Assembly (NCBI GenBank): GCA_001179505.1
Contig: CDMY01000571.1
Span: 124,001 to 188,000 of the forward strand
Source: Vitrella brassicaformis CCMP3155
Taxonomy: Eukaryota; Protista; Chromerida
DNA length: 64,000 nt
Direction of reading: 5' to 3'
The notes under the pieces: generated by a model
Seen by the model: only the letters and a program-made list of their open reading frames with translations
Databases searched by the model: none
Told to the model about the DNA's origin: nothing
Program-made: the position numbers and the translations under genes
Part shown: in pieces, positions 5,950-56,819 of the stretch
Numbering within the stretch: the first letter of the stretch is position 1
Layout: every line of letters starts with the position of its first letter

Positions 5950-6864
5950 ATGAGAATCGAGAAGTGTTGGTAACCAAAACAGGAAAAATGGAAACACCTG
6001 ACACACCACAACACACATCTGTCCGTCCGTCTGTCTGTGGTGTGTGATGATGATGTGGGTTGTCTGGTCCAGGTACTGTTCCAGCAACATCTACCCTGGT
6101 TGGTGCAGCATCTCGTCGATGACGGACTCTCACACCCAATGGCACATGACGCGGGTGTGTGTGTGTTTGGCAATCTGTTCTGTTCCATTTGGTCATCAGG
6201 TCATGGGATTCAGTTTGTGCGCAACGACGCGAAGATATTTCGTTTCTGCCGGTCCAAGTGCCACCGGCACTTCAAGATGAAACACAACCCTCGCAAGGCC
6301 AAGTGGACCAAGGCATACAGATCTTCTCACGGTGAGAGAGGGAGGGAGTGACAAATGTGCGTGTGGTTGTGGACGATTGCCTTGTGTCGTGTCGCCCGTC
6401 GTGATGATGCAGGGAAGGAGATGACCATAGACCCCACCCTCGAGTTCGAGAAGCGGCGCAACGCGCCTGTGCGCTACGACCGCGACTTGATGGTCCAGAC
6501 CATCCAGGCCATGAAGGCGGTCGACCGCATCAAGACCAAGCGCCAGGAGCGGTTCCAGAAGACGCGACTCGCCGCCCAGCAGAAGTTCCGCAAGTCGATT
6601 GCCGACTCGGTGCTTGCCAAGAATGCCACACTGCTGCGCGGCCCCGCCAAGGCCATCAAGGACGAGAACCTCATGGCCGACACAGTGAGGGTGGGCGAGG
6701 CCGCCACGCAGAAGAAACGATCGACGGCGGCTATCAAGGCGGTGGACGGCAGCCTCCGGAGGAAGAAGGGGCTGAAGAAGGGTATGGTTGGGAAGGGGAC
6801 GCTGTCAGGGGGAAAGGCCAAGGCGGTCAGGCGGGACAAAGACGGGGACGTGGAGATGGCATGA
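5950..6864 (+). CDS. RLP24: Ribosome biogenesis protein RLP24 (RSL24D1, L24e family); 4 exons
   Basis: Spliced MRIEKCW|YCSSNIYPG|[44 protein letters not shown]|[23 protein letters not shown] matches the RLP24 consensus, including FEKRRN. Confidence 0.93.
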
Positions 6865-7177: not shown

Positions 7178-10100
7178 CTACAGCTCTTCATCGAGCATTC
7201 CAGGCGGCCCACCCGCGGGGTCCTGCACCACATGCTCAATCACACCGTCATCACCTCCCTCCCTCTCCCCCTGTGTGTCTTCCTCCAGCGGCCCCGAGGC
7301 CAAGACACTCGCCAAGCTGGTCTTCTTCTTGCCCATGAAGGCCGAACGCTCCTCTGCGATCTCACTGGCAGACAGTGTGCTGGTCTGCGTGACGAAGGCC
7401 TCCTTCACGGCGGGAATGCCAACTTCGCGCGAGGGCACCTTCTGCATGAGACCAGGCCGATCGGGGGCTGGTGGGGGTGGGGGTGGGGGTGAGGGCGGCG
7501 GCGGTGGTTGTGGCTGTGGTTGTGGTGGACTCTCAGGCGGCCGTGGAGGGGCGGGCTGTGTCTCGTCTGTCTTGCGAGTCTCTGGCTCGGGTCCACCAGG
7601 TGTTGCGGCCACCGGGGGAGGTGTGGGTCCACCCGGCACAGGTGACGGAGGTGGCATGGCCGCCTCTCTCTCCTCCTTCTCTTTCTCCTCTTTTTCGTCG
7701 TCGTCTTCTTTTGGTGGCTCTTCAACTCTCACCTTGGGCAGCTCGGGCGGCTCCACACCCACCAGCCCCACACCCGCCCCCTCTGTCGCCTCCTTGGGCT
7801 CCTCGACCACTGTGACCGTCTTGGGAGGGGGAGACTCGATGTCCGGGGCGATCGCGACTGTTTTGCCCCTCCTGGGGGGCTTCTCGCCCTTCATGCGTGC
7901 GGCTGTCTGTCGGGCCCTCTCCGCCAGTGTCGCGAGCATCGTGTCCCGCTGCGCCGCTCTACGCCTGAGAAGGAGCGGATTTGTATGAGAGTGGATGGTG
8001 TCTTGTGTTGCCTTGTGTTGTCTTGTGCTGTTGGTACCGAGCGTTGAATTGTTGGATCTCCACAATGTTCTGCACGAGCGTCTTGAGGCCTTCGAAGCCC
8101 ACAACGAGATACAACACGGCCATCCTGCACACACAGAGACGGACACGCAGGGCACAGAGAGAAGCTGCCTTGCTGCGGGAATCGTGTGTGTGTACCCCAC
8201 CCTGAAGCTCTGAGCCACAGCTTGGCCGTGTAGTCGTCGAAGTAGAGGGCGAACAGCAGAAGGAAGAGCGTCGCGATGAAGATGAAGAACAACACACTGA
8301 AGTAAGCCAACTTCTCTGCCAACTGCAGACAGACATAACAACGGTGTATGTCGAATATATGAAATGGGGAGTTCCTTTACGTGTCGATGTCGATCTCGCT
8401 GACCTCTATTATGGTGTTGGATGCGGTCGCCCGCATGTCTACACGCTCGTCAAAGGCCAACCGATCGGCGTCACGCAGCGGCTGAGACACACCGAGAGAG
8501 GCAGAGACAGAAGGAAGGGCTGTCGGATGCATGTGAATGTTGCTGACCTGCTGCTCCATATACATCTTCCGAATGCTCTTCATGAGCGCCTGCTTGCCGT
8601 CGTCCTCCATGATGGTCAATGTGGGCGGCGGCAAAGGCGTTATCACCAGGGAGTCGTCCAACAACTCAGAACTGCACTCACACACAACACAAGGGGAATG
8701 CAGACAGACACGAGACACATGCATGGGATGCTCACTGACCTATCTGCAGGTGGCTCTGGGAGGGCTGCGAGTGTCATGGGCGTCACGGGCAGCGGCGCCA
8801 GCTGAAACATCGATGGCGCCAGGCCCGACAGGCTCATCGGCGATGCCGTCCTCCTGCTCCCCCGCTGCTCGGAGGGCACCAGGCCGGCCGACTGGATGGC
8901 GGGCAGGCCTTTCTTACGCATGCCCTTGTCCGACTTGTCCGTCGCCTGACGCAGGAGCGCACGACGCGGGCGTGATGGCGGGGCCTTGGCCGGATCACCA
9001 GATCCCTCGCGACTGTAAGGGGTCGACATCTGAACCACAAATGTCGGCTTACACATCATGTCGGCTTTTCGCTCCTTCTCTCACCCCGCTCTTCGGTGTC
9101 TCGAGTGGCGGCAGTCTGTGTTTGCCCCTGGGCGTGGTGAGGGGCCCCTCCCTCTCCATCCCGCTGCTGACCGGCCCCTCTTGCTCACCACCGCCCCCCT
9201 CAGACGGGATCGGCATGGGCAGTGGGGGGATGCCCAAGGCGATGGCCTCCCCTGGCGGCGGCGGTGGTGGTGGAGGCGGGAGGGGCACCATGCCCGGCAG
9301 CCGGGGTGACGTCTGGCCAGACTGTGGGTTGGGCAAAGCCACCGATGGGGTTTCGTGGGACGGGGGCGGAGGGGGAGGGGATGGGGGTGGAGGGAATGGA
9401 GGGGATAGGCCAAGACCTGAAGAAACAACATGGACAAGGCTCATCAGCCATGGAGGGCGTTCTTGTTGATCTCACCTTCCTTGTCCATGCCCTTATGCAT
9501 TTCGTCCTGCAGGAAACAACAAACGAGAGCTGGCCAGTGAGTGCATGGTGTCCTCCCCTCTTGTGATGCCTTCCTTTCTCACGTCGAGAGGTATGGGCAT
9601 GGCCTCGAGCATCTGCACTTCATCGGGGTGCTTTTTGCTCTTCTTCATCGCCTCCCTCTCCATCTTCATCACATACTGGGGCGACGAAAACGCCAGCATC
9701 GGCGGCCCACCCTTGCCCTCACCAGCCATGCCGGCCTCGGCGTCCTCATACGGCAGCAAGGGGGTGAGTGTGGGTGGCCGGTAGGGGCGCTTAGAGAACA
9801 TGAGATGCAGCAGCCGTGCGATGGGGAAGGCGAAGAAGGCGCCCATGAAGCCAAGAGCGGCCCACTCCTCCTTGCGGCCGGAAAACTTGCCGTATACCAA
9901 GGCGGTGGTCGACATGCAAGCCTGGAATGTACCGGCACAACACAACACACACTGGGATGAATCGCCTCCCAGAGCCCTTTCGCCCATCTTTTTACCAGCA
10001 CGGCCGCGAGAAGGCAGGACGCTTGCTGCAGCCGGGTCATCTGCAGCCAGCAACACGGCGGACAGCACTTCAGACATCAATCAGACGCAGGCAGGAGACA

Positions 10101-13100
10101 GACACATGCGCCCCTCCCTCCCTCTCTCGGCTGACCTTTGCCTGGCGGTCTCGGTAGAATGCGGTGATGACCAGGTGGTGCCGCTTGAGAAGTATCCAGA
10201 AGGTGCGGGCGAAGCGCACCAGGTCACTATTGGTCTTGTAGAAGATGGGGTCCGTCTGCGATCGGGGACCCGTAACTCCGTCGGCAAGCTGAAAGACAGA
10301 CGGATGGATGGATGGATGGAAGGGCTCACACAAGGGGAGGAGGGCCAAGGCTGTCTTGTCTTGGTATGAGTGTTTGCAGCGTGCTCACCTGTTTGAACTT
10401 GATGGGTTTGTTGACGTCCTTTTCGTCTTGTTTGAATGCCCAGTAGTGGAGTGCGGCGAAGAAGAGGAGGATGCCGGCCATGACGTACATGACCAGAAAG
10501 GATATGTCCTCCGCCGTCAGGAAGAAATCCAACGCCTGATCCACTCAACACGCACACGCATGGCCGAGGCCGCAGTGTACATCTGTGTCTGTCTGTCTGT
10601 CTGTCTGTGTCACCTCTGTGACGACAGCAGGGACGCCAAATGGCGCCACGGTGACGTCCAGGAACTGACCCACCACACCCAAGGGCTCAGCCAGCAATGT
10701 CGTGCTGCAGAAGACACTCGTGTGGCAGGGATGGTTGTTGGCGCGTGCGACGTGAGCTGACCGACCTGCATCCCTTCTCGTTGTTGAGGATGCCAGCCCG
10801 CGACCACTGACCCAGCCCTAAGTTGCTCTCCCAATCCCATGTCCTGACACAACGTGCACACGCATGGATAACAATTTTGTGAGGGGCACGGCTTACCAGC
10901 AGGTGGCGACGGCGAATGACGAGTGCTCTGTGAGTGTGTTGACCGGCTTGGCCTCCTCCTCTACCGCCAACTGGGCACCAGCCTGAGCACACACACGGAC
11001 AAACACACACAGATGAGGGCCGCAACAAACCACGAGATGGGTCTGGTCTCCCTCTGAGCGCTTGTCTGCTCTCAACGCACATCGTCGTATACGGCGAAAG
11101 CCTGCATGATGAAGGGGCCAGCGGGGCCCTTCTCAGCGTACGCCCACGGCTGCAGCTCCATGGTGAACATGACCTTGCAGTAGCCGTAAGATCGCTCCTC
11201 ACCTGCATCACACACGACACCATCGGACACGTCCCTTTGTGTACCCCCGTCCCTCTCCACCGTCAGGTATCTGCCAGTTTTCCGACTGGAATGAGAAGGA
11301 CTCGTCCGACTGTGTGAGATTGCGGGTGCGGCCGACGCGCACTCTGCCCAGGGGGAAGTCGAAGTCCTTGGCCTTCTCGCCGGGATTCTGGCACACACAC
11401 ACACACACACAACACATGACTCCTGCACGGATGTCGGGGTGGTCTGCGTGTGCGTGTGTGTTTGGTTGCTCACGAGGAGTCTGAACACCGACGAGCAGAC
11501 CTGGCTGATCATCGACGCCAGCCGCTTCACCGTCTGGTATACACAGAAGAGACACAAAAGAGACATGGACCCACCCACCCACAGCAGCACCTCTGTGCTG
11601 CTGTGTGTGTATTCTGTCTGGTTGTCTTGGTGACCGACCAGGCCCTTTTGGAAGAAGACTTTGGCTTCCTGCTGTGTCGTGCGGGCACGCTCCTCCTTCC
11701 AACGAAGGCGGGACACACTGACATTTGGAATGCAAGTCACGAGATACACACCAATCCATGTGGTTTGTGCCAATACTGTGAGTATCATGTGCTCACTCCC
11801 TCTCCCCTGCCGTCAGGTAGTCCGACAGGTTGATAAAGAACTGGAAGTCCTGAGCCCGGAATGTCTGCACACACACAGCGAGACACCTCCAGTGTTGATC
11901 GCCCCCGCAGTCATGTGGTGTGTGTCCCCCGCTCCACTGACCGTGATGTTCTCTTCGCCTTCGTATAAGTTCTCGATATACGATTGCCAGCTGATCTCGA
12001 ACTCCTCCTGCTCGATGAACATCTTTTCCAGCACGTCAGAGCTTTGCCCCTCCATGGCGTCGCTGGAGAAGACGCGCATCTGCTGACCCTGAGCCGCCCC
12101 TCCTCCACCGGCCACCTGAAAGTACTGCGGCTGTGCCGGAGGCTCCACGCGCACGATGCCGTAGCGGCCGCTCGGGAACGACTGTGACGTGGGGGCGTGG
12201 TAGGGGAAGGAGACCGGCGGCTGAATGCACACATGGATGGATGGATGAGCGTGGGTGTGTGTCTGTCTCTACAGGTGCTGTCAGCTCACGAATGGCGCCA
12301 TCTGCGGTATGTTCTTCGGCCTCCCAGCCATCCATAGCTGCAGCCGACGGTAGTAGGCCGCCCCCGCAGGCGCTCCACGCGGCTGTATGGGTGGCGGGTC
12401 ATACCGCCCTCTCGGCTGTGGCGCCGCATTGCGGTACCTGGCCTGCCAGTTGTTGGGTGCGTTGGGGGGCGGCCAGTCGGATCGCGGGAAGAAGACGTTT
12501 CCCTCGGGGTCGCCGGCGTTGACCGAGTCGAAGCTGAACGCGCTGGCCTCGTCGTCTGAGGGGGCCATCATCTCGCCGAGAGAGTTGAAGATCGTCCCAG
12601 CCATCTGGTCCTTCTCCTGCAGACAGAGAAGAGACACGATGGCCATGCGATTAGTTGTTGAGCTCCCGTGCCATGTGCTGGCGAACGTACCGATTCGGAG
12701 AGTGAGTCGTCGGCTGTGAGTGTGCTCTGCCAGCCGACCATGGTCTCCATGAACTCCACCATCCTGTCGGTCGACCCCACCTCCTCTGCCAACGCCAAGG
12801 CCACCTGCTCAACACACAAAGAGATTCTCGTCAAGTGGGTGCGCATCCAGGGGTTTCTCGCATTCATTCACCGTGGCGTATGACCCGACAACAGACGGCG
12901 TGATGGCCGCTTTCTCGCTGCCGCCGATGAGCACATTGAGGATGCCGTCTGCGTGCATCTCACTGATGCGACGCTTGCGGGTCTTACGCTGACAACACAC
13001 GAAGGCAAAGCCAGGGAGTCACATTGCGGGCCCTTCACTGCGTTCGTCTGTCTGTCTGAGTGTGTCTTGCCCTTCTGGCTTCATCTTCGCCACTTCGTGG

Positions 13101-16100
13101 ATGGGGCGTTGGGGGTGCCGTGGTGGCGTTCGGATCGGGGGCAGGGGTGCTGACTGGACTCACACCACTCCCCTGGCACAAACACATACACGTGACTAAG
13201 ATGGCAGCCTGCCTTTGTGCCTGTGTTGGGTCTGTCTTACGGAGCTGGGCCCTCCTCCGGTGACGACGAGCACGGCCTGCATCAGTGAGAGGGCCGCTGT
13301 CTCAGGGTCACGGTTGCCCGCCTCGGCCAACAACTCGTTGAACAAAATTCTCTTCTCCTCATTCTAAATCCGATAGGGCAGCCAGCTCAACACACACACA
13401 CTCGATCCACATCAGTGTGAAGCTCACCGTCGGTGGTGGGTATATCTTGTGAGTTGTCTCGGCATAGGTCATGACGCCGTAGAATGTGTACACCTGGGGA
13501 AGAAGATCGACATGTGCAGCAGGCAGTTCGGGCAGATTGAGACGGCTACCTTCTGTCGGATGCTGTATACTGACCTCGACGAAGATTCGCACCAAGTAGT
13601 CATCGTCTGCGTTGCCGGCAGGAAGGGCATCGGTCCGCTGAGTAGGGGACGCTATAGGATTGGACCTGACATATGAAGACAGAGAGAGCTGATCACGCCA
13701 TGCCACTTTCCTGATTGTGGTGGCGGCTGTTTCTCACCTGAGGTTGACCTTCTGCCCTCCTCGGATGAAGCCAAACTGGTAGGTGAGTGGGGTGTCGGAT
13801 GAGCTGAAGTCGGTGGCAACGATGGTCTTGCTGTCGTATATGGAGGAGTCCGCCGCCTGCAGAGAGAGAGAGAGAGACACACACACATGCACACGTGTGT
13901 CCGCTGTCACTCTTAAGCGTCTTGCCGTTGCTGACCTCTTGCTCGTCGACGAACAGGGCGAGAGAGCCCATTGTCTGATTGATGCGTGTGAACGATGGAA
14001 CAGGTGCGAGAGACCCTTGGTATCTTCCCCTCTTCTTACCGGCGGCGGCCCTGCGGTTTGAACGGACACCTGAGCGCATCCGGTGAGGGGCGCTCTGTCG
14101 GGAAAATAAGGATTGGACACCGTCACACACAACCTGCAACCACAACGAGAGGGAGCATTTTGCCGGCCTCTGACTAATCCCTGGGTGCCTCAACCCACAC
14201 GTACCTGAAGGAATATCGAGCGTCGGGTCCGAGCACGTCCGGCACCAGACTCAAGCTGCGAGAATTGCTGCAGAGACAAAGATGCACACGCGACACATGT
14301 GTATGGGTCTGTGCGTGCGTGCACTGCGTGCGTACGTCGGGTCTGACGCGAAGGCGTCAGGGCTTCTCGCCGGTGTGAGCTCGTCCGACATCAGGAACAT
14401 GCTGCGAGGCACCAAGTACTCCTTGCCCTGGGCAACACGGCAACATCATACGCCGACAGCAGCCAGCGAGCGGGCATGCAAACAAAGCTCACCGCTTTCT
14501 CTGCAGCGGCTTTGTCTGCGAGGTTCCACTTTGGGTTTGGCACCTCCTGGAATATCGTCCAGTTGTAGACAACCTGACACACACAAGCCAAGACCACCCT
14601 CAATGGCTGTACCTTTGGTGCGGGCGATGGATCTCACCTCGGGCTTCGATTTGTCGATCTCGTCTCCCGCCTGGAGCCGCCGGATGGAGGAGTCGGGCTC
14701 TGACGTCAGGTTGAAGCGGGCCTTGTCTTGGTCGGCGATCTGGCCTGAACGACATGGATGAACACGTGTCCACGTGGCGAGCGAGGCTGCCGTGTGTGTT
14801 GTTGATGCCTGATATCCTGAACGCTTGTGTGGCCACGACGGTCGAGTCGGTGAGGGGGTCGATTACCACCTGCACACACACAGGAGAAGAAAAGGTTGTT
14901 TCCTTTGCTGCATTGCTGGAGTGTCTCTCACCTGTGGTGGCGAGACAGCTGCCTCCAGGATCGTGATGACGGCCTGACGGCACGAGACACATGACACACG
15001 CGTGCTTCGTTCGTCATTTGTGTCGGAACCCATGCCTCACAGTTGCGGTGGCGTTCCTGCCGTCGGCCTCTGTCGTGACGCTGAAGATGTACTCACTGCC
15101 GCCGAACAGGGCATCTTCGCGACGGGTGTTGAATATCACCACACCTAAAGACAGACGCACACACAGCCGCAGTGAGACACAGAGAAACGCTCTTGTCTCT
15201 TTCGCACCGGGCACGTAGTATTTGCAGATGTACGTGCCGGGTACGCCCGCCGCGTTGGGGAAGAGTGGGACAAAGTATGTCTTGCCGACGTCTTGGAAGG
15301 TCTCCTCCATGTCCAGGTCGCAGTTGGCCGGCTGCGGCAGCTGTGCGGTGGTGTACGGCAACACCTCCTCGAAACACGGCCTGCATCGGTCAACCAACAT
15401 ATCTCGGTCAGCTCTGTCTGTATCTGCCTGAAGTGTTCTTCGTTGCACCGACCGTCCATCCGGCGTGATGCAGGTGAAGTTGAAGAACCAATTCTGCGAC
15501 ACAACAGGAAACACACCCCAGCGAATGAGACACAACATAGAGGGGCGCATGCGTGTGCGTGTGTCTGACGGGCGACTCCTCGATGGGTTTGTCAGGGAAG
15601 TCAGGGTCCACCGAGTCCGTGGCGTCGATGGCAAAGTAGTGCAGCTCAGACACCGAACGAGATCCGCCGCGAATGCTCGCTCTGAAATTCAGCACAAGGG
15701 ATGCAGCATGGCCGGCCACACGTGTGTGTATGTCTGTGTCTGTGTTTGATGCCTGATGGGGCTTTTCTCCACGTTGACCTCCACCGAGTCGAATGTCAGC
15801 GAATCAGGGTCGTCAAACGACTCCTCGTAACCGACCTGACTCCCAACACACAAGACACACGCATTGCGTCAGGCACAAAGATGGGTGCGTGCTCCTCGGC
15901 TGACCTGACAGGAGAAGATATACTTAGTGCCTGGTATGAGTGTGCCTGCGGGGATGACCAGCGACGCTGACCCCGTTCGCAGATTCAAGTCCTCCAGGTT
16001 GAGAGGCACAAACTCCACTGACCCTGCACAAACACAGAGCAACCACAAGCGCGCCAGCCTCCAGCCTCCTGAGGTTCGTGTGGTATATGCCGGTGGCGAG

Positions 16101-19100
16101 GACGGTCTGCTGCTGCTTCCCCCGCCATTCAAACTTGAGCTTCTGGCTCGCTATCTGCCACACCAAAACCAAATGGTGACCTGATCTGCACGCTGTGTGT
16201 GTGGGCGTCTCATCCTTGGCTGTACCTGTGTTGAGTCGAGCCCTTCACATCTGGATTTCTCGGCCTGGACACTGAGTGTGAGGACCTTCCTGCGGAAGGT
16301 CGGCACGCTCTGGGGGCCCTGAATGAAGGCCTGCGGGGCGGGGATCTGACGCTTGTAGAACTCTGCGAACGGCAAGGAAGGAAAGGACGATCGATGAGTG
16401 CATGGATTGCACTGCCCGCGTGTCTTGTCTTGTCTTGTCTTCTCTTGTGCTGTGTGTGTGACCGAGTGTGGTTGAGGTGGTTCGCGGGGGATCGCCCCAC
16501 TTGGAGGTCATTGTCACCTCAATCATGTAATCGCACCCTCCATTAACAAACACATCAACAAGACACACGCAGGCTTTCACGCTTCACAGAGCGGTGGGGG
16601 CACATCTGCGCTGTACCGACCTCTCCTGAGGTCGTTTGCGCCGATGTAGACCTTTTCAGAGCCGTACAGTGACCCGCTGCCCGCCGAGGAGCCCGCAAGC
16701 AGACCCTTGATGATCTGAACAGACGCCCACATACGCAGAGAGAGAGAGCGGGACTCCCACAGGCGTACGTGCCTGCGTCTGTGTGCGTCGGTCTCACCGT
16801 GACGAATCCCGGTCCGTCTTCGTATTCGGTGATGTCTCTGTAGAGCACGTTGCCGTTGTCGAAGTAGCGGCACTGGGCCCTGATGAATTTCCACTGCCAC
16901 GACGGACGGCTGCCGTGGTTGTAGGACGACGACGCGTCGATCGTCATCTGCACACATGGCGAACGAAGGTGGCTTACATATCCCTCCCTCGGCGTGTGTG
17001 CGTACGGGGCTGCAGAGGTCGATGTTTCTCGGGATGGACACGACCACCACTGGGTCTTCAATCGGATCAGGCTGCTCAAGCTGCACAAGGCAAGGAGGGA
17101 GACAGACGCAATGGTGGATGGTAGCAATGATGCATGCGCCCTCCCTTGTGTGTGTGCTTGAAGCCCACCCAGCTCACCTTGACACCTCCTGACGCCGCGT
17201 TTGACCACTCGCCGTCGACGTGTGCATACACCGTCCTCTCGCGCACGATTATGTCGTCACCAGGGTTCGGTGTCAGATACCTACAAAGGACATCTATACT
17301 TACTCGCGGCTGCGCCTCATCCACGAGTGGGCTCACCTGGCGGGCAGTTGTACTTGCACGCTGGCTGCCGTGGTCCACTGACAGGAGGTGCCGTTGCCAA
17401 GTGTCCCCAGAAGCGACGCCGTGTGAGGCGCGAAGACCTTGCTGCAGTCTAACAGACCTGAGAAAGCAGCCAGGCGGCACAATGGGCGGTGCTGCTTTCA
17501 TTCTTTCGTTGACCCACCTCTGTGTTGAGTGGACCAGTCGACGCCATCGGGGATGAAATCTCCGTCCTCGTCCATGGGCACAGCCCCCTGGATGGTGAAG
17601 GAATCGAACGTCACGTAGATCTTCCTGAAGCCCCAGACACACATTGGATTGCCCGAGTGTTGGCTCGTCTTCCCGCTCATGTTCACCTGCCGTCCATATC
17701 GAAGATGGCCTTCTCGAGCTGGGGCGTGGGGAGGGTCAGGGGGATGATGGGGTCGCTGTTGGTGAGCAGTGTGGTAATCTGGTGAGAGAAGAAGCGCGTG
17801 CACAGCAGATGGATCGCTGCTGCTGCTGCATGAGACATGACACGTGTGTCCACCAGTTACCACATGCGACCCTCGGGAAAGCTCCTCTGCCACCTGCACT
17901 CACGCAGGCACAGCACAGACAGGCAGCCATATGTATGTCTTTCTTATCTCGTGCTGCAGTGCAGCCAGCCACGGAGTCACCTCAAGGTTGTAGTATTCGC
18001 GTGTGAATCCGTCCCTTGTGTTGACCTCCACGATCTCCCACGGCTCAGAGTAGTCGGGGGAGTCCTTGGTCACGAAGAACGACACGTTCGTCAGGTGATC
18101 CGTGCATGTCGCACCGTAGAGAAAATGCCTGGAGGGGGTGGGGTGGGCGATGGATGAGAGAAGCAGGCGGCTTCCACTGCTTGCGATGGTTGGCTTGCTG
18201 GCGTACTTCTTTGCGTATTGCGTTCTTGTGGTGGGGTTGACAACCACCGTGCCGCCGTCGACATAGGTGTCCCGGAACTCAGTCAGCTGACAGAGAAAAG
18301 AAAGAAAGGACAATATGATGATGGATGGATGGCATCTCCTGTTTACTTGGGTATCGTTGTCTCTGTACGCTTGGCCTAGCTTGACGTAGTGGTAGTTACA
18401 CGACCGATAGTCCTGCCATTCCCCCGCAGTCGACAGACACACATGGTGAGTGAGACACACGTCTCGCTCCACGTGTGGGTGTTCTGTGTGGCACCTGGAA
18501 GGTTGGGTCGCATGAGAGGACGGCGGCGTAGAGGTCGTGGTACTTGGAGTTGCTCTCCAGAAGCGCCAGCGGCTCCTGAACCGGACGACTGCACACACAG
18601 AGAGAAGACAATCATACATACCCTTTTTTAGCTGCAGAGTCGAGGTGGTGTTGACTTGAGGAGAAGCCGTGGAGTGTCGATTGCCGGCTGGCCCGTGATG
18701 ACGGTATCCAGAGTCACATTGAAGTCAAACGCATACACGTTGTGACTCCACGAAGTGAAGTCGTACCCTCCTACCAACCTGCAGTGACACAGCCGACCAG
18801 CAGCCCAACACCGGCAGGCTTTTCGTTCCTTCATTGTCGCATTATGCTCACATAGGCGCTGCCACTAGCTGGGAGGCTGACAGTGCGAAAGGGGAGGTGC
18901 CTGATGAAGCCGTCACGGCCGGTAGTGCGAGGTAGTAAATGTCGAAGAGCGAATCGACGGCGGCGAGCGCTGCGTTTATCCGTCCAGCCACCACAGGACA
19001 ACAGGCAGGCTCCGTATGCACAGCGGGCTTTGGTCCGTGCCGCCGACCTGTGTTAGAGTAGATATCTCGCGTCTGGCTCTTGATCTCATTCGGCAGCTCC

Positions 19101-20581
19101 AGGGTGGTCGTGAATACCTGACACACAGAGGGAGAGGAGAACAGACCAAGAAGGCTCGGGCTGCACGTCATGCCGCTCGGCTGTCCGTCCACCTGAATGT
19201 TTTTAGTGTCTCTCGAGTCGAATCTGAACATTTTGATGTTCATGCTGAAGTTCTCGAGCCGCTGCTTCTTGGTCCAGAAGGGCACCTCAAACCCCAGCAG
19301 ACGGCTGTCGTCAATGTCGTACTTGAGACCCTGGACAGAGAGAGAGAAGCGGCATGTGGTGACATGGACAGATGGACACACTGAGGGAGAGTCCACCCAC
19401 CATGAGGAGGAACTCCTTCAAACGGACTTGATACGGGAACCTTCAGACATCAATACACAAAATCAACAATAACGTTGCGCCATGTCGTCTCCCTGTCTCT
19501 TGTGTGGTCGGTCAGCCAGACATATAGGTATCCGCTGCACCGGTCTTTTCTCACATGGGTCTTCCGTCGCTGAGTGAAACGGTATGGACGTAGAAGCGCA
19601 TGTCGCTGCTGATGACGTTGCCGAGGTTGTCGTACGTCAGCTCCTCCATCCCAACAGTGCGATACAGATTGAACCGCTGCAGACAGACGCAATACAACCC
19701 ACCCACCCACACACGAACAAGCATTCTATCTATCGGTGTGTCTGGTCTGGCTAGGCATATATCTCATCTTTCCTACCCATGGGTCGTATGCGTCTCCGGC
19801 CGTGGCGTGGACGAAGTCATACATCTGGTAGAGCGAGTACATGTCCGGCTGCAGCACCCCGCCGCAGAAAAGCTTGGTGCCCTCGAAGTAGCTCGACGGA
19901 CACTCCATCTCACACAAATCCTCGTCGATGATCTGAAGCTGCACAACACAACACATCCCCACAAATCCACGCACGCATCGCATACCAGCCTACTCCTCCG
20001 GGCATCAAGTGTCTCACGTTTCTCCTGGAGGTGAGGCACCAGCAGCTGCTGCCCCTGACCACAGCCATCGAGAAGTCACGAATCTCACAGGCCTCCACAC
20101 ACGCAACCGGGCCGTCCGTATCGCCCAGCAAGAGCGAGTTGGTCGAGTCCACATCGCCTTGATAGCAGCCCAGGAACGTCCAGGGACCTGACAGACACCA
20201 CACACATGCACAGGCACCCGATGGGAGGGCCTCGAGGACCAGCCCGTCCCTCGCCCCACTGAGTCGCGAGCGTGCTGTGTTCTTTGGGTCAGGGTTGAGC
20301 TGCTTTGCATATGTGTTGGACGGCAGGTAGAGGGGCGTGATGGAGCCCCCAGCCGCCTCCACATCCGCCCAAAACTGAACAGACTTGAGACTCAGACCTG
20401 AAGGGACACACCAACACACACACAAGAGCAGACAATGGACGACAGCGGCAAGAGCGATTGACAGATCTCTCTGCGCATGCTTTGCGCCGCTCTGCGGGCG
20501 ACGGCTGGCGGCCGTCTTACCACTGCAGAAACGCAGGGCCGCTGAGAAGACGAGGACAAGGGCGAGGGTTCTGGCCATCAT
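7178..20581 (-). CDS. Polycystin-1/REJ-like large multi-exon membrane protein: signal peptide, WSC, REJ-like ectodomain, GPS-like motif, about 5 TM segments, Pro-rich loop and tail
   Basis: Signal MMARTLALVLVFSAALRFCS. WSC-like FLGCYQGD...CVEAC...GSSCWC...CEMECPSS...CGG. REJ-like TIDASSSY, SASLVIPAGTLIPGTKYIFSCQVS, LPAGNADDDYLVRIFVEV. TM segments at ~10500, ~9800, ~8270 and ~8100. Continuity across every exon was not fully verified. Confidence 0.72.
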
Positions 20582-20709: not shown

Positions 20710-20796
20710 CAACGCCAAAGTCATCCGGAAAAGTAGAGATGGGAGTGTGTTGATGGGAGTGTGTTGATGCGAGAGTGTGTGGTGGTGTTTTGACGA

Positions 20797-22863
20797 TGAC
20801 CGACGGGGGGGTCAGTTTGCGGACGTTGCTGGATCAGCAAGAGGCGCTGTTGGGTGGTCGGTCGGTCAGGCAGCTCGACGAGCGCGAGTACGCCGCCTAC
20901 ATGGAGAAGGAGAAGCAGATCACCATCGCCCTGCAGAACAGCACCAGCGTCGAGGTCGATGACGAGATTCTCCAGGCGGTGCGGACCGTCCACGAGCGAA
21001 CCAGCAACCAGCTGGCAGCTCCAGGCGCCTCGTCGTCAGGCGGGTCATCCTCATCCTCGTCGGCATCTTCATCGCGTTCGAGTCGCAGCAGCAGCAGTAG
21101 CCGGGGTCGGCACCGGTCAGATCTGGTGGAGCTGTCGGTGCGGGGCACCCGCTTCACGGTTCCGCTGACCACCATCGCCGTCGTGCCCGACTCCCTGCTG
21201 GCCACAAGCATCCACGGCGGCTCACGGGAGCTCGACATCTCACCCCGATACTTCTCCAAGATCCTCGATGCGCTCAGGCGCGGCCGCAGCAACCGGACGT
21301 CGTCGATCGACTCGCTGCCCGAGGCGGACCGTCCGGCGTTCGTGTCGCTGGTGCGGCAGCTGGGGGTGGAGAAGCTCTTCATGCGCCTCGAGACCATCCC
21401 AGAGGAGGCCACCGACGCCGAGGCCGCACAGGAGGTGCAGACCGAGGAGACCACAGCTGTGGCTGAGGGCCAGCAGGCCGCCACCGCCGACGAGTCCGGT
21501 ACGCAGACTCACCCACGGAGCGAAGGGATGGGATACATGCCTGTCTGTATGCCTGCATGCGTGTGTGCGTGTGTGTGTGTCTGTGTGCGATGTGTTTGAC
21601 AGATTCGCCCCCGGACTCCCCGCACCCGAATCGCATCGACATCATCCTGCGTGGTCAGCGCGTGTCGCCCGTGGACGCCATCACGTTTGAGGAGTCGATC
21701 AGCTACAGCGTGCACCCGGACGGGGTGCTGCTGTCGTGCCTCGTCGAGGCCGTCGTCGAGACCATCAAGGGGGCCGTCTTCTACAGGCTGCTCTACCAGA
21801 TCACCGACAAGGAGGCCGACTACCTCAGGCAGCTCCTCCATAGCAGGCCGCCACCCAAACCCACACGATACACTGACGACACCGCCGCCGCAGACGAGGT
21901 CGAGGACGCACGCGCAAAGGCGCCGACGGAGCCCCCCAGCCCGCCGAACGCGACCTCGTCCAACAACGGCACGTCGACCAACGCTGCCACATCCAGCAAC
22001 GGCAGTGGGAGCGGCAGCAGCGGTGCCGCGGCCACCACCACCACTGCAGAGGCGTCACCATCCCAGCCATCACAGCCATCCCCGGCTGACACGCCCGCAC
22101 CCACACAGACCCAGCCGTCCTCTGAGTCGGCGCCCCCTCCCCCTTCCCCTCCCTCCGACCCCCCACCCACACCCACACCCACACCCACACCCGCACCGGC
22201 CCCGGCAGACTCGCCCGCCGCACAAGCACCAGGAGAGGCGGAGAGTGCGGCCAAAGAAGGCGAGCAACAGAGGGAGGGCAGCGAGGCAGTGGCGGCCAGC
22301 AGCAGCAGTAGCGGCAATGGCAATGGCAATGGCGGGGATCAGGCAGCAGCAGCAGCAGCTGCTGCGGAGGGCGAGGGCCCATCGAGCCCGCCGACGCCCG
22401 CGCCGTCGTCGATAGCTGAGCCGGTGCAGATGACGCGTGCCGAGAAGATCGACAGGAAGGTCGAGCTGGCGTTGAAGGGCAGGGTGCAGGCCTGCCGCAT
22501 CAAGGACCACCACACCTTCCCCGTCGACCACTGGAAGGACATTCACATCCACGTAAGTCACTCGGGGGGTCGGGGGGTCGGTGGGGCTTGGGGGGTGGGT
22601 GGGCTGGGCACCATCACACGCACGACAGACCACCCACATAGATATGATGGGGCTTTGTCTTCTGTCGTCTGGTGTGGTGTGTGTGTGGTTGTGTCTGTCA
22701 GACGATCTCGATGGACGGCGACGTGTGCGCGTACAGTCTGGCGGACCTGATGGTGGATGGGGACACAATTTTGCGGGGGGACGAGCCGTGCGGCGGGCTG
22801 CCCAGGCAGATAGTCGTAGAACTCACTGTCAACGTCGAGATCGACGTCAACGGCAGAGTCTAG
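20797..22863 (+). CDS. BTB/POZ (KCTD/T1-like) domain protein, multi-exon, with S- and P/A-rich linkers; start approximate
   Basis: LVELSVRGTRFTVPLTTIAVVPDSLLATSIHGGSRELDISPRYFSKILDALR fits the T1-type BTB pattern (V.L.V.G..F......L...P.S.L ... D..P..F..IL..LR). Confidence 0.75.
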
Positions 22864-28786: not shown

Positions 28787-29683
28787 ATGGCGTCCACGTC
28801 GAGCGAAGTCGATGAGGTTCTGAGAGCATGGTGCACGGACAATCCCCAGGTGATCGGCTATGTCGTCATGAACTCTGACGGTGAGTGGACCCACAAACGA
28901 CCAGAGTCACACGGACAGAGCGCCATTCAGCCGGGGGGAAAGGCAGCATATCCGCAGAAAGACAGACAACGGGCAAATGGGGGCGTGCAGATGAGGGCAG
29001 GGAGGCTGGCAGGGTAGCTCATGCGCACAGAAGCCAGGAAGGTCGCTGCTGGGCCGACACACGCGAACAGAAAGCCCGTCACTTTGTAGTGACTGTCCTC
29101 ATGGGGCCACTTATGCTCATCTCTCTGGCTCAAGGCTTTGCTCCGTCGTTTCCCCCCAGGCATCCCAGTCAAGTATCACGAGAAGCTGCCGTACGACAAG
29201 GCCGTCCAGTACGCAGCCCTGCTATCGTAAGGGACGCGAGGGAACGTATTGAGACGTCGAATCGCTGTCGCTCCTGTTTGTCTGTGTGTGGGGGGTCGGG
29301 TCGGATTTCCTCCTACAGGGATTTCTGTACGAGTTCAAGAAAGTGTCTCAAGGAGCTGCTGCCATATGTCGAGGTACGGGCCATGCACTAGGCTCATACT
29401 GTGTCTCGATCTCTCTGCCTGTGCGCTTGTGTGGTGGGTGGCAGAACGACTTGAATGCCGTGAGGATACGCACCAAGGAGCGCACAGAGATCATCGTGGT
29501 CAGCGCCATGGACTACGTGCTCATCGTCGTGCAGGCGAGTGACAAACGAACGAATGCACACATAACTCAGTGGTTCATCTGTGTCATGTCTGTGCGTTGC
29601 TCTGCTGTCGCTGCCTACAGAACTGCAGTGGCAAGCCCATTAACTACGATGAGGGCGAGGCCGCCAAGCCAGCAGAAGCGTAA
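28787..29683 (+). CDS. DYNLRB: Dynein light chain roadblock/LC7 family protein; 5 exons
   Basis: Spliced MASTSSEVDEVL...VIGYVVMNSD|GIPVK...AVQYAALLS|DFCTSSRKCLKEL...|NDLNAVRIRTKERTEIIVV...DYVLIVVQ|N matches the roadblock consensus (G..V.N.DGIP; L..LRIRTK..EI.V; Y.LIV.QN). Confidence 0.9.
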
Positions 29684-29864: not shown

Positions 29865-30566
29865 TCATTGCCGCTTCGTGGTCATCAACTCCCCCGCCGT
29901 GAGCACGCTCGTAGCCAGCAGCCCCAACTGCATGAGCGCCAGCAGCGGCCCGCCCCCATTCAGCTGCTTCCGCTTGCTAGGCGACGCCAGATAAGACCAC
30001 CCGAAGCACACACGGCCCAGCAGGTACCCCACGCCGAACACGGCCGCCATGACAGGGTGGCGGAGACCGCCCCACCCCAGCAGCACCAGCACAACGGGCA
30101 AATTCTCGGTGTAGTTGCTGTGCATGCGGATGGCGCAGTTGAGTCGGAACCAGTCGACGTACGGCAGCTGGCTGCTGTACACGCCGCTGCCCATGTCGGG
30201 GTAGCCCTCCGGGTCGATGCCCTCGCCAAATGCCAAGAAATGCTCGCGCGCAATGGCTACCCACGGAGGGCGAGAAGAGGGCGGCAGGTGCGATGGTTGG
30301 AAGGGCTCAGAACTCGCCGCTGCTGATGGCGCCTCGTCACCATCGGCTGCCTCGTTGTAGGTCTGCTGCTGCTTGCTAAGTGCCTCGAGTCTGAGGATGT
30401 GCCGCCGGATCTGGGCCACGTACAGACCTTGGAGCGTGCTGCACACAACACAGCAACAGCCACATTCCGCAGACGGAGTTGCTGCATGCTTCATTCTTCT
30501 CACCAGTGTGTGACGAGGGCGCTGCCCGTCACGATGACCCATCCGTAAGCGCGCGGGTTGCTGCAC
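29865..30566 (-). CDS. MAPEG family membrane protein (microsomal glutathione S-transferase 3-like); 5' end uncertain
   Basis: GYPDMGSGVYSSQLPYVDWFRLNCAIRMHSNYTENLP followed by TM segments and YLLGRVCFGWSY fits the MAPEG FN..QRAH.N..E and GR..Y motifs. Confidence 0.82.
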   Translation of the reverse strand: MQQPARLRMGHRDGQRPRHTLVRRMKHAATPSAECGCCCVVCSTLQGLYVAQIRRHILRLEALSKQQQTYNEAADGDEAPSAAASSEPFQPSHLPPSSRPPWVAIAREHFLAFGEGIDPEGYPDMGSGVYSSQLPYVDWFRLNCAIRMHSNYTENLPVVLVLLGWGGLRHPVMAAVFGVGYLLGRVCFGWSYLASPSKRKQLNGGGPLLALMQLGLLATSVLTAGELMTTKRQ

Positions 30567-31057
30567 AGAGGTGCAGACGAAGTCATCGACAGTCTCTCTT
30601 TTCCCCTTCTCGTGCGAGCTTGCGATTTGCGAGCTTGATCGCGAAGGAGTGACGAGAAGGCGTCAGATAAGCAGTTTCGGCGTCTTCGTTGCTGCGTACA
30701 CCGTGCTGAAGAATTGGCATCAGATTCGCGCGAAATCTCACTATCTCTCCAGACAGCCGTCTTTTCCCGGCGACACATCTCTCTCTGTGCGACAGCCACG
30801 AGCGAAGCGCGTCAGCGGCGAGTCAGCAAGCAGTCGACGGGCAGATCGAAGCCGTTCTTGACTCGGCGGAAACCAGCAGAGCACTTGTTGACCCCAGGTG
30901 TGACGTGTGACGGTTCTGTCTGCTAAAGGAAGGTACAACGGACAGCAGCAAGGCACCGTGCTGCGCTAGTATTGGGAATCTCCAGTCCTTGTTGCGTTGC
31001 TTCGTGTGTGTCTGTGGTGTGTGTGTGTGTGTGTGGGTGTTTCCTCCAGTCAGCACA

Positions 31058-31962: not shown

Positions 31963-32262
31963 NNNNNNNNNNNNNNNNNNNNNNNNNNNNNNNNNNNNNN
32001 NNNNNNNNNNNNNNNNNNNNNNNNNNNNNNNNNNNNNNNNNNNNNNNNNNNNNNNNNNNNNNNNNNNNNNNNNNNNNNNNNNNNNNNNNNNNNNNNNNNN
32101 NNNNNNNNNNNNNNNNNNNNNNNNNNNNNNNNNNNNNNNNNNNNNNNNNNNNNNNNNNNNNNNNNNNNNNNNNNNNNNNNNNNNNNNNNNNNNNNNNNNN
32201 NNNNNNNNNNNNNNNNNNNNNNNNNNNNNNNNNNNNNNNNNNNNNNNNNNNNNNNNNNNNNN
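31963..32262. other. Assembly gap (300 N)
   Basis: N run. Confidence 1.
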
Positions 32263-47879: not shown

Positions 47880-48179
47880 NNNNNNNNNNNNNNNNNNNNN
47901 NNNNNNNNNNNNNNNNNNNNNNNNNNNNNNNNNNNNNNNNNNNNNNNNNNNNNNNNNNNNNNNNNNNNNNNNNNNNNNNNNNNNNNNNNNNNNNNNNNNN
48001 NNNNNNNNNNNNNNNNNNNNNNNNNNNNNNNNNNNNNNNNNNNNNNNNNNNNNNNNNNNNNNNNNNNNNNNNNNNNNNNNNNNNNNNNNNNNNNNNNNNN
48101 NNNNNNNNNNNNNNNNNNNNNNNNNNNNNNNNNNNNNNNNNNNNNNNNNNNNNNNNNNNNNNNNNNNNNNNNNNNNNNN
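47880..48179. other. Assembly gap (300 N)
   Basis: N run. Confidence 1.
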
Positions 48180-49020: not shown

Positions 49021-49320
49021 NNNNNNNNNNNNNNNNNNNNNNNNNNNNNNNNNNNNNNNNNNNNNNNNNNNNNNNNNNNNNNNNNNNNNNNNNNNNNNNN
49101 NNNNNNNNNNNNNNNNNNNNNNNNNNNNNNNNNNNNNNNNNNNNNNNNNNNNNNNNNNNNNNNNNNNNNNNNNNNNNNNNNNNNNNNNNNNNNNNNNNNN
49201 NNNNNNNNNNNNNNNNNNNNNNNNNNNNNNNNNNNNNNNNNNNNNNNNNNNNNNNNNNNNNNNNNNNNNNNNNNNNNNNNNNNNNNNNNNNNNNNNNNNN
49301 NNNNNNNNNNNNNNNNNNNN
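49021..49320. other. Assembly gap (300 N)
   Basis: N run. Confidence 1.
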
Positions 49321-56519: not shown

Positions 56520-56819
56520 NNNNNNNNNNNNNNNNNNNNNNNNNNNNNNNNNNNNNNNNNNNNNNNNNNNNNNNNNNNNNNNNNNNNNNNNNNNNNNNNN
56601 NNNNNNNNNNNNNNNNNNNNNNNNNNNNNNNNNNNNNNNNNNNNNNNNNNNNNNNNNNNNNNNNNNNNNNNNNNNNNNNNNNNNNNNNNNNNNNNNNNNN
56701 NNNNNNNNNNNNNNNNNNNNNNNNNNNNNNNNNNNNNNNNNNNNNNNNNNNNNNNNNNNNNNNNNNNNNNNNNNNNNNNNNNNNNNNNNNNNNNNNNNNN
56801 NNNNNNNNNNNNNNNNNNN
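56520..56819. other. Assembly gap (~300 N)
   Basis: N run. Confidence 1.

What the first reader, a model, noticed from the sequence alone, without database searches (positions are those of the whole stretch)
7178..20581. Polycystin-1-like receptor with WSC + REJ + GPS + 5-TM architecture in an alveolate alga
Seen, by manual splicing: signal peptide; WSC-like Cys pattern (~20190-19830); long beta-rich REJ-like region; GPS-like motif; then TM segments. The TM-region motifs align with human PKD1 as recalled. FWILLKRHHLVITAFYRDRQ compares with HIWLSIWDRPPRSRF. WAALGFMGAFFAFPIARLLHLMFSKR compares with the TM3 VYPV...LFR pattern. Spliced WLRASGMAVLYLVVGFEGLKTLV compares with WLLSSSASFLASFLGWEPLKVLL. 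Known: WSC-REJ-GAIN/GPS-TM order is the hallmark of animal PKD1-family ciliary and sperm receptors. Inference: a flagellar or gamete/zoospore carbohydrate- or mechano-sensing receptor predating animals. It is easily missed because it is fragmented over dozens of short exons.
Basis: partly seen in the sequence, partly recalled or inferred. Interest (0 to 1): 0.8.

Follow-up and report, generated by a model that had tools for sequence, protein, structure and literature searches.

The report
Channel-less polycystin-1-like algal receptor
This is one real, already annotated 67-exon gene of the alga Vitrella brassicaformis for a large surface receptor that shares its sugar-binding (WSC) and REJ modules and one membrane-helix motif with human polycystin-1, but lacks that protein's PLAT domain, self-cleavage site and ion-channel half.

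Summary
Observation confirmed. Window 7178-20581 (minus strand) is one gene of Vitrella brassicaformis CCMP3155. It has 67 exons and 66 short canonical introns, and encodes the public 2,817-aa protein P0001 (UniRef name 'WSC domain-containing protein').

- **Supported by Pfam:** a complete WSC domain (aa 71-150, above the curated cut-off) and a strong REJ domain (E 5.8e-27), with a second partial REJ upstream.
- **GPS:** a single GPS-like Cys/Trp motif lies 68 aa before the first membrane helix. Pfam GPS does not match, and the His-Leu|Thr cleavage triad is absent.
- **Membrane part:** five helices are predicted. There is no PLAT domain and no channel-like 6-TM half.
one holds. The TM5 match is only suggestive, and the TM3 match is at chance level.
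- **Not found:** no sequence relatives in three word searches, one exhaustive search and one metagenome scan. The fold prediction was unusable.

This scan's notes report many similar channel-less GPS/5-TM receptors elsewhere in the same genome. REJ/GPS or GAIN proteins outside animals are already published. Verdict: a PLAT-less, channel-less, probably uncleaved variant of the polycystin-1/REJ family. The flagellar or gamete role is untested.

The parts
7178..20581 (-). Whole coding region: 67 exons, 66 introns, 8,454 nt of CDS including the stop. Encodes P0001 (2,817 aa), Vitrella brassicaformis CCMP3155, contig CDMY01000571.1.
20521..20581 (-). Exon 1: start codon and hydrophobic signal peptide (aa 1-20; the signal region ends about aa 21).
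   Evidence: Hydropathy peak at aa 1-24. A divergent neighbouring gene starts about 200 nt upstream.
19858..20176 (-). WSC domain, aa 71-150, 8 Cys, split by one intron.
   Evidence: Pfam PF01822: 29.3 bits against a cut-off of 27.8, profile 1-82/82. The single-exon half scored E 7.8e-4.
17012..19857 (-). Ectodomain stretch of about 560 aa (aa 151-711) with no recognisable family.
   Evidence: No Pfam match. Atlas feature search gave only chance-level scores of 0.82 or less.
15821..17011 (-). Partial REJ-like module, aa 712-931.
   Evidence: Pfam PF02010 E 4.4e-5, profile 100-298/452. A faint single-exon hit was seen.
13349..15793 (-). Main REJ domain, aa 941-1387.
   Evidence: Pfam PF02010: 94.8 bits, E 5.8e-27, profile 72-422/452. 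Also on record for the public protein.
10614..13348 (-). Juxtamembrane region, aa 1388-1973: helical part, Pro-rich insert, then a beta-rich part. GAIN-like by position and predicted secondary structure only.
   Evidence: No Pfam family. The single-sequence AlphaFold2 model has pLDDT 41.6 and is unusable. Atlas feature neighbours are GPS-domain clusters at 0.90, which is weak.
10683..10901 (-). GPS-like motif, aa 1916-1950: C-x2-W-x10-W...G...C followed by STTLLAEP. No His-Leu|Thr triad.
   Evidence: The pattern is unique in the protein and rare in shuffles. An RNA contig joins this exon to the TM1 exon.
10437..10505 (-). TM1, aa 1984-2006.
   Evidence: Hydropathy 2.5. The exon is confirmed by an RNA contig.
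9889..10234 (-). Pre-TM2 helix and TM2 (aa 2041-2099), the block that matches human polycystin-1. It spans three exons, including the 45-nt exon 9996-10040.
9796..9864 (-). TM3, aa 2108-2130.
   Evidence: Hydropathy. Its similarity to polycystin-1 TM3 is at chance level.
8314..9795 (-). Cytoplasmic loop of about 359 aa (aa 2131-2489), 19% Pro, with poly-Pro runs.
   Evidence: Composition. No Pfam family. No RNA contig covers it.
8236..8313 (-). TM4, aa 2490-2515.
   Evidence: Hydropathy 2.9.
8070..8217 (-). Short outer loop and TM5 (aa 2522-2545), with the motif W-L-x2-S...G-x-E-x-L-K that resembles the end of polycystin-1 TM5.
   Evidence: The splice junction 8201|8124 is confirmed by RNA.
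7178..8069 (-). Cytoplasmic tail (aa 2546-2817), rich in Pro and Glu, plus the stop codon.
   Evidence: Composition. No Pfam family. RNA contigs cover 7178-7366 and 7888-7964.

Best explanation
The region is a single expressed gene for a type-I-oriented, five-pass surface receptor of the polycystin-1/REJ family, in a reduced form.

**Shown.** In order, the protein has: a signal peptide; one WSC carbohydrate-binding module; about 560 aa of unassigned ectodomain; one and a half REJ modules; a juxtamembrane region ending in a degenerate GPS motif; then five membrane helices. The cytoplasmic pre-TM2 helix and TM2 are homologous to those of human polycystin-1.

**Missing.** Three polycystin-1 features are absent: the PLAT domain between TM1 and TM2, the last six channel-like helices, and the His-Leu|Thr autoproteolysis triad.

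**Inferred working.** The ectodomain binds a glycan, either of the alga's own wall or of a partner surface. Strain or binding is passed through an uncleaved GAIN-like stalk to the 5-TM bundle. The signal is read out by the two long proline-rich cytoplasmic segments (loop 3 and the tail), which act as docking sites. The protein cannot itself form part of a channel pore.
For: - **One gene.** 67 exons join exactly to the public protein. All 66 introns are canonical and 123 nt or shorter, so no gap is long enough to hold a gene boundary. The public record has the same gene ends.
- **Expressed and spliced.** Contigs of run X1 skip six annotated introns.
- **Domains.** WSC scores above the Pfam cut-off. 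REJ scores E 5.8e-27.
- **GPS-like motif.** It is unique in the protein and correctly placed. Language-model neighbours are GPS-domain clusters (weak).
- **Topology.** Five hydrophobic helices fit the positive-inside rule. All 13 N-glycosylation sequons lie before TM1.
- **TM2 block against polycystin-1.** Ungapped score 59 against a next-best of 3; 0 of 23,000 shuffles reach it; the maximum over the six-frame translation of the whole window is 25. BLASTP E is 1e-5. A HMMER profile extends the alignment into the pre-TM2 helix, where the profile comes from the algal protein alone.
- **Absences.** Pfam finds no PLAT, PKD_channel or GPS, and the TM1-TM2 loop is only about 73 aa.
Against: - Unbiased searches did not connect the membrane part with polycystin-1 or with anything else. 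phmmer against the PDB found nothing. The exhaustive search with the exon that holds TM3 and part of TM2 found only the protein itself. The word searches found only the protein itself or nothing.
- The TM5 match fails BLASTP (E 0.66), and TM3 and TM4 show nothing.
- The GAIN fold is not shown: the model is unusable.
- Only 6 of 66 introns have RNA support. The 45-nt exon that carries the core of the TM2 motif has none.
- Ligand, location and signalling are all inferred.
Confidence: 0.7

Rival explanations
1. Domain-shuffled mosaic. WSC and REJ modules were grafted onto a lineage-specific chromerid 'GPS/5-TM' anchor that is unrelated to the polycystin-1 membrane domain. On this reading the TM2 resemblance is chance or convergence at a membrane boundary.
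For: - No unbiased search links the membrane part to polycystin-1.
- TM1, TM3 and TM4 show no similarity.
- There is no PLAT domain.
- Scan notes describe many Vitrella GPS/5-TM receptors with quite different ectodomains. One follow-up could not show kinship with polycystin-1 (not tested here).
Against: - The TM2 block includes polar identities (H, R, T-R-x-Q-x-A-x-C, Y-G) rather than mere hydrophobicity. It exceeds all composition-matched shuffles and scores BLASTP E 1e-5 with composition-based statistics.
- It lies at the equivalent place, after TM1 and before a TM2-TM3 hairpin.
- It sits in a protein that also carries REJ, a domain I know only from the PKD1/REJ family (my own knowledge, not checked here).
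Confidence: 0.2
2. Accessory subunit of a polycystin-type channel. The receptor works like polycystin-1 with polycystin-2, docking onto a separately encoded TRPP-like channel and gating it.
For: - Kinship with polycystin-1.
- A scan note mentions a polycystin-like multi-pass protein elsewhere in this genome (not tested here).
Against: As I recall the solved polycystin-1/polycystin-2 complex (not checked here), polycystin-1 joins the pore through its last six helices. Those helices are missing here: there is no PF08016 match and only five helices. No coiled-coil or other known polycystin-2-binding element was found in the tail. No partner gene lies in the window.
Confidence: 0.12
3. Annotation chimera. 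Two adjacent genes, one for a secreted WSC-REJ protein and one for a small membrane protein, have been merged by the gene predictor.
For: RNA contigs cover only parts of the last 6 kb laid.
Against: - The frame stays open across all 66 canonical introns, none longer than 123 nt, which leaves no room for a terminator and a promoter.
- My own gene finder, which was made to run from the first ATG to the last stop as one chain, rebuilt nearly the same exons.
- An RNA contig links the GPS-like exon, the stalk exon, the TM1 exon and the loop exon.
- There is one signal peptide at the start, and membrane helices only at the end.
Confidence: 0.04

Closest known systems
Human polycystin-1 (PKD1; PDB 6a70_B, 8z6f_A)
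   Same: - Signal peptide, a WSC module and a REJ domain, followed by a juxtamembrane GPS region and then the membrane helices.
- A TM1 / TM2-TM3 hairpin / long cytoplasmic loop / TM4-TM5 hairpin layout.
- A homologous pre-TM2/TM2 block and a suggestive TM5 motif.
   Different: - No LRR, C-type lectin or PKD repeats.
- No PLAT domain in loop 1.
- No HL|T cleavage triad.
- No TM6-11 channel-like half.
- 2,817 aa against about 4,300 aa.
- Proline-rich loop and tail with no recognised domain.
Sea-urchin REJ proteins with few helices (SpREJ1, 2, 7-10; PMC1934368)
   Same: They are PKD1-family members that keep REJ, usually with GPS, but have 0, 1, 2 or 6 helices instead of 11. SpREJ6, 7 and 10 carry WSC, and some lack PLAT.
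   Different: They are animal proteins. None is described with five helices.
Ectocarpus Esi0130_0068 (male-gamete REJ protein; PMC4700764)
   Same: A non-animal protein from the wider stramenopile-alveolate grouping, with REJ + GPS + multi-pass membrane part.
   Different: It has 1,427 aa, 6-7 helices with a reported polycystin cation-channel match, a recognised GPS domain and no lectin domain. Its expression is gamete-specific, which is unknown here.
Other Vitrella 'GAIN/GPS + 5-TM' receptors noted by this scan (s1-212016, s1-226934, s1-231185, s1-242801 and others)
   Same: Same genome and same plan: a huge modular ectodomain, a GPS region, five helices, no PLAT, no channel half, and poly-proline loops.
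   Different: They are known to me only from notes. No sequence similarity to them was detectable from this protein in the searches run. Several are said to keep an intact cleavage site, whereas this one does not.
Fungal Wsc1-type cell-wall stress sensors
   Same: An extracellular WSC module on a membrane-anchored sensor of a walled cell. This is a functional analogy for wall-strain sensing.
   Different: From my own knowledge (not checked here), Wsc1-type sensors have a single helix and a Ser/Thr-rich rod, with no REJ or GPS. Only the WSC domain is shared.

Membership tests
Polycystin-1 (PKD1) family | REJ domain (Pfam PF02010) | tested here: met
   94.8 bits, E 5.8e-27, aa 941-1387, plus a partial copy at aa 712-931.
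Polycystin-1 (PKD1) family | GPS motif within a GAIN domain just before TM1, with an HL|T/S cleavage site | tested here: inconclusive
   - The Cys/Trp core motif is present once, 68 aa before TM1.
- Pfam GPS and GAIN give no match at E up to 10.
- The cleavage triad reads L-L-A or T-T-L instead of H-L-T.
- The fold model is unusable.
Polycystin-1 (PKD1) family | PLAT/LH2 domain in the first cytoplasmic loop | tested here: not met
   No PF01477 match. The loop is only about 73 aa.
Polycystin-1 (PKD1) family | Eleven helices, the last six being TRPP channel-like (PF08016) | tested here: not met
   Five hydrophobic helices. No PKD_channel match.
Polycystin-1 (PKD1) family | Sequence similarity of the N-terminal membrane domain (TM1-5) | tested here: inconclusive
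   - The pre-TM2/TM2 block is significant pairwise.
- TM5 is suggestive only.
- TM3 and TM4 show nothing.
- phmmer against the PDB finds nothing.
Polycystin-1 (PKD1) family | C-terminal coiled coil that binds polycystin-2 | not tested
   No coiled-coil predictor was run. The tail has no Pfam family.
WSC-domain proteins | WSC domain with eight conserved cysteines (PF01822) | tested here: met
   29.3 bits against a cut-off of 27.8, full profile. Cys at 74, 96, 100, 115, 117, 132, 136 and 148.
Adhesion GPCRs | GAIN/GPS followed by a secretin-like 7-TM domain (PF00002) | tested here: not met
   No 7tm_2 match and only five helices.

The most novel reading that the evidence does not exclude
The free-standing REJ-GAIN-like-5TM unit of chromerids is the ancestral form of the front half of polycystin-1. 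Animal polycystin-1 would then have arisen by inserting PLAT into loop 1 and fusing a TRPP-type channel behind TM5. In that case the conserved pre-TM2/TM2 block marks a signalling element older than the split between alveolates and animals.
Probability: 0.2. Interest if true: 0.7.

Novelty: new variant of a known kind. Interest (0 to 1): 0.42.

Why it matters
What the first five helices of polycystin-1 do is, to my knowledge, poorly understood. A natural protein from a distant eukaryote that keeps only REJ, the juxtamembrane region and those five helices suggests this half can work without the channel half. It also points to the pre-TM2/TM2 block as the part under longest conservation, which is a concrete target for mutagenesis in polycystin-1.

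For chromerid biology, it adds a WSC/REJ member to what this scan's notes describe as a large, unstudied set of surface receptors in a close relative of apicomplexan parasites. The chromerid genome paper mentions neither REJ, GPS nor polycystin.

The value is limited. The gene is already annotated, the kinship rests on short stretches, and non-animal REJ/GAIN proteins are already published.

Tried and rejected
- **Pfam on 30 single stop-free pieces**. Only half a WSC domain and a faint REJ hit appeared, because exons are too short. Other weak hits (DUF4666, BTB_2, IL32, SPACA9, Ser_hydrolase) are chance.
- **Own dynamic-programming gene finder**. It rebuilt about 66 exons. It was superseded by the public protein, which maps exactly.
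- **Exhaustive phmmer search** with aa ~2036-2230. It returned only the protein itself, so no relatives were available for an alignment.
- **Word searches** with aa 1640-2140, aa 700-1400 and the stand-alone piece 1730-2135. They returned only the protein itself, or nothing.
- **Metagenome scan** with aa 1900-2135. Nothing found.
- **tblastn of the protein on the window**. No paralogue.
- **AlphaFold2 without an alignment**, aa 1700-2135. Mean pLDDT was 41.6. The Foldseek PDB search on it gave only TM-scores near 0.1 (TRPML, SSB and others), which is meaningless. The second fold job was not spent, because no alignment could be made.
- **Atlas feature search**. For aa 160-710 it gave chance-level scores. 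For aa 1730-2135 it gave GPS clusters at 0.90 with low recognition, which is a lead only.
- **Profile searches A1 and A2** against the PDB. They are circular over the typed polycystin-1 fragment. Only the extension beyond the fragment counts: there is none at TM5 and about 19 residues at pre-TM2.
- **TM3 'VYPV...LFR' claim**. Chance level.
- **Literature** on REJ in alveolates. Nothing found.
- **A 30-letter loose end** of an RNA contig at 13046. It was not found anywhere in the window.

**Method notes.** No self-made spliced model was sent to any search. All whole-protein work used P0001, which a tool returned. Exons were joined only inside scripts, to check identity with P0001. Three short polycystin-1 fragments (23, 40 and 29 aa) were typed, and each was verified as an exact match to PDB 6a70_B. 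The 65-residue polycystin-1 stretch printed has no reference, so it was not re-entered as one string and its gapped significance was not computed. Only its first 23 residues, the part that adjoins the 40-mer, were typed and tested on their own.
Full report
**What is there**

The window has about 58% G+C and looks eukaryotic. The minus strand between 20581 and 7178 carries many short stop-free pieces that read like protein. Pfam scans of 30 such pieces found only half a WSC domain (E 7.8e-4) and a faint REJ hit (E 0.26), because each exon holds only 10-110 codons.

A gene finder written for this locus chained about 66 exons into one frame. The exhaustive protein search with one stop-free piece (window 9496-10080, minus strand) found a single protein in 1.8 billion: P0001, 2,817 aa. 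A source names it as an unnamed product of Vitrella brassicaformis CCMP3155. UniRef calls it 'WSC domain-containing protein', with Pfam REJ on record. The public record (GCA_001179505.1, contig CDMY01000571.1) calls one gene with exactly the finding's ends.

Joining 67 exons of the window reproduces P0001 residue for residue. The 66 introns are 53-123 nt long (median 72): 62 are GT-AG and 4 are GC-AG. With no gap longer than 123 nt, one signal peptide at the start and membrane helices only near the end, a two-gene reading has little room.

**Expression**

One run (X1), guessed to be RNA, holds about 9% of the sampled words of the last 6 kb. Its contigs skip five annotated introns exactly at GT..AG on the minus strand: 7965-8037, 8125-8200, 10289-10388, 10536-10613 and 10705-10765. 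A 9-nt overhang matches the exon beyond a sixth intron, 11865-11941.

- One contig links the GPS-like exon, the stalk exon, the TM1 exon and the loop-1 exon.

Only 6 kb could be laid, in one call, so the 5' 7.4 kb has no RNA test. The DNA runs X2 and X4 cover the stretch without differences.

**Domains**

- **REJ.** On the whole protein Pfam finds REJ at aa 941-1387 (94.8 bits, E 5.8e-27). On pieces it also finds a partial REJ at aa 712-931 (E 4.4e-5).
- **WSC.** A complete WSC domain covers aa 71-150 (29.3 bits, cut-off 27.8), with the eight cysteines.
- **Not found at E up to 10.** GPS, GAIN, PLAT, PKD repeats, PKD_channel and 7tm_2.
- **Unassigned.** The 560 aa between WSC and REJ have no family.

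**GPS and GAIN**

At aa 1916-1942 the protein reads C-x2-W-x10-W-x3-G...C, the Cys/Trp core of a GPS motif, 68 aa before TM1. The pattern occurs once in the protein. It arises in 0.3% of shuffles anywhere and in 0.16% of shuffles at that distance from TM1. A language-model search of aa 1730-2135 lists GPS-domain clusters first (score 0.90), but recognition is below the tool's guide value, so this is only a lead.

Where the His-Leu|Thr triad should be, the sequence has S-T-T-L-L-A-E-P. In either register the base and the nucleophile are missing. By the mechanism described for GAIN domains (PMC3321182), self-cleavage is therefore not expected; this is an inference.

The fold itself is not shown. 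Without relatives, AlphaFold2 gave pLDDT 41.6, and its Foldseek matches are meaningless.

**Membrane part**

Hydropathy gives five helices: 1984-2006, 2080-2098, 2108-2130, 2490-2515 and 2528-2545. Basic residues flank the cytoplasmic ends as expected, and all 13 N-glycosylation sequons lie before TM1. This supports an N-out, C-in topology.

- Loop 1 is about 73 aa, too short for PLAT.
- Loop 3 (359 aa) and the tail (272 aa) are about 19% proline and have no Pfam family.

**Is the membrane part like polycystin-1?**

Unbiased searches say nothing. phmmer of the whole protein and of the membrane pieces against all PDB chains did not find polycystin-1.

Three short fragments were first verified as exact stretches of human polycystin-1 chain 6a70_B: 572-594, 245-284 and 309-337.

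- **TM2 block.** 6a70_B 245-284 aligns without gaps to P0001 2060-2099.
  - There are 10/40 identities: H, R, T-R-x-Q-x-A-x-C, A, Y-G.
  - The BLOSUM62 score is 59, and the next best window in the protein scores 3.
  - None of 3,000 whole-protein shuffles or 20,000 membrane-region shuffles reaches it.
  - The best of about 128,000 positions in the six-frame translation of the whole window scores 25.
  - BLASTP with composition-based statistics gives 26.9 bits, E 1e-5 for 586 x 40 residues. Scaled linearly to full length against full length this is about 5e-3 (my scaling).
- **Pre-TM2 helix.** A HMMER profile made from P0001 2020-2145 plus the fragment extends the match about 19 residues upstream, P0001 2041-2058 against 6a70_B 222-239. 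There the profile comes from the algal protein alone. Taken alone, that piece reaches P 0.03-0.09.
- **Register.** That exon has canonical splice sites but no RNA cover.
- **TM5.** There are 9/23 identities, score 41 against a next best of 15. Shuffles give P 0.001 and 0.0002, and the six-frame maximum is 28. However, BLASTP keeps only nine residues at E 0.66, and a profile does not extend into TM4. This is suggestive only.
- **TM3.** Chance level.

These tests were post hoc and cover short stretches. Together with REJ they make kinship with the polycystin-1 family likely. They do not show that all five helices are homologous.

**Relatives and what is known**

No relative was found by the word searches, the exhaustive search, the metagenome scan or within the window.

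The scan's own notes, which I could not test, list 26 'polycystin' notes in this genome. They include follow-ups describing channel-less GAIN/GPS five-helix receptors with varied ectodomains, and at least two more with REJ. So the scan has found this kind of gene before, on other DNA of the same genome.

In the literature:
- GAIN domains are reported from Tetrahymena (more than eight) and Dictyostelium (PMC3321182).
- An Ectocarpus gamete protein has REJ + GPS + 6-7 helices (PMC4700764).
- Sea-urchin PKD1-family members have 0, 1, 2, 6 or 11 helices. Only five of the ten have PLAT, and three have WSC (PMC1934368).
- The chromerid genome paper does not mention REJ, GPS or polycystin. It mentions WSC only for Chromera perforin-like proteins.

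**How it most likely works**

*Shown:* a secretory-pathway protein with a large glycosylatable ectodomain that carries a WSC carbohydrate-binding module and REJ modules, anchored by five helices, transcribed and spliced.

*Inferred:* it binds a polysaccharide, either of the alga's own thick wall (as fungal WSC sensors do) or of a partner surface. It passes strain or binding through an uncleaved GAIN-like stalk to the helix bundle. Its conserved cytoplasmic pre-TM2/TM2 element and proline-rich loop and tail recruit cytoplasmic partners. It cannot contribute to a pore as polycystin-1 does, because the six channel-like helices are missing. A role on flagella or gametes is possible but has no support here.

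**Verdict**

The gene is a PLAT-less, channel-less and probably uncleaved variant of the polycystin-1/REJ family. It is already present in public annotation and is one of several such genes noted in this genome. Interest is moderate.

Noticed in passing
window 12989-13070 and three other introns (16024-16090, 15682-15752, 14745-14808): Four of the gene's 66 introns can only be drawn as GC-AG, not GT-AG, while keeping the public protein. That is about 6% of this gene's introns.
   Followed up: partly
window 13046-13177: An X1 contig covers 25 nt of the annotated GC-AG intron. It then continues for 53 letters that match nothing in the window. This could be unspliced RNA, an assembly break at the (GACA)n repeat, or a different donor for the low-complexity exon 13071-13172.
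   Followed up: partly
introns across window 7965-20520: 21 of the 66 introns hold short CA/TG, GA/TC or GACA-type repeats. Intron G+C is 55% against 61% in exons.
   Followed up: no
window 31963-32262, 47880-48179, 49021-49320, 56520-56819: Four runs of exactly 300 N, either masked or gap stretches. All lie outside the gene studied.
   Followed up: no
window 20796-22863 (+ strand): A divergently transcribed neighbour of 604 aa starts about 200 nt from this gene's start codon, so the two probably share a bidirectional promoter region. No Pfam family is on record for it or for its first exon.
   Followed up: partly
window 5950-6864 (+), 28868-29683 (+), 29865-30581 (-): Ordinary housekeeping neighbours according to the public gene calls: ribosomal protein L24e, a roadblock/LC7 dynein light chain, and a MAPEG-family protein.
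   Followed up: no
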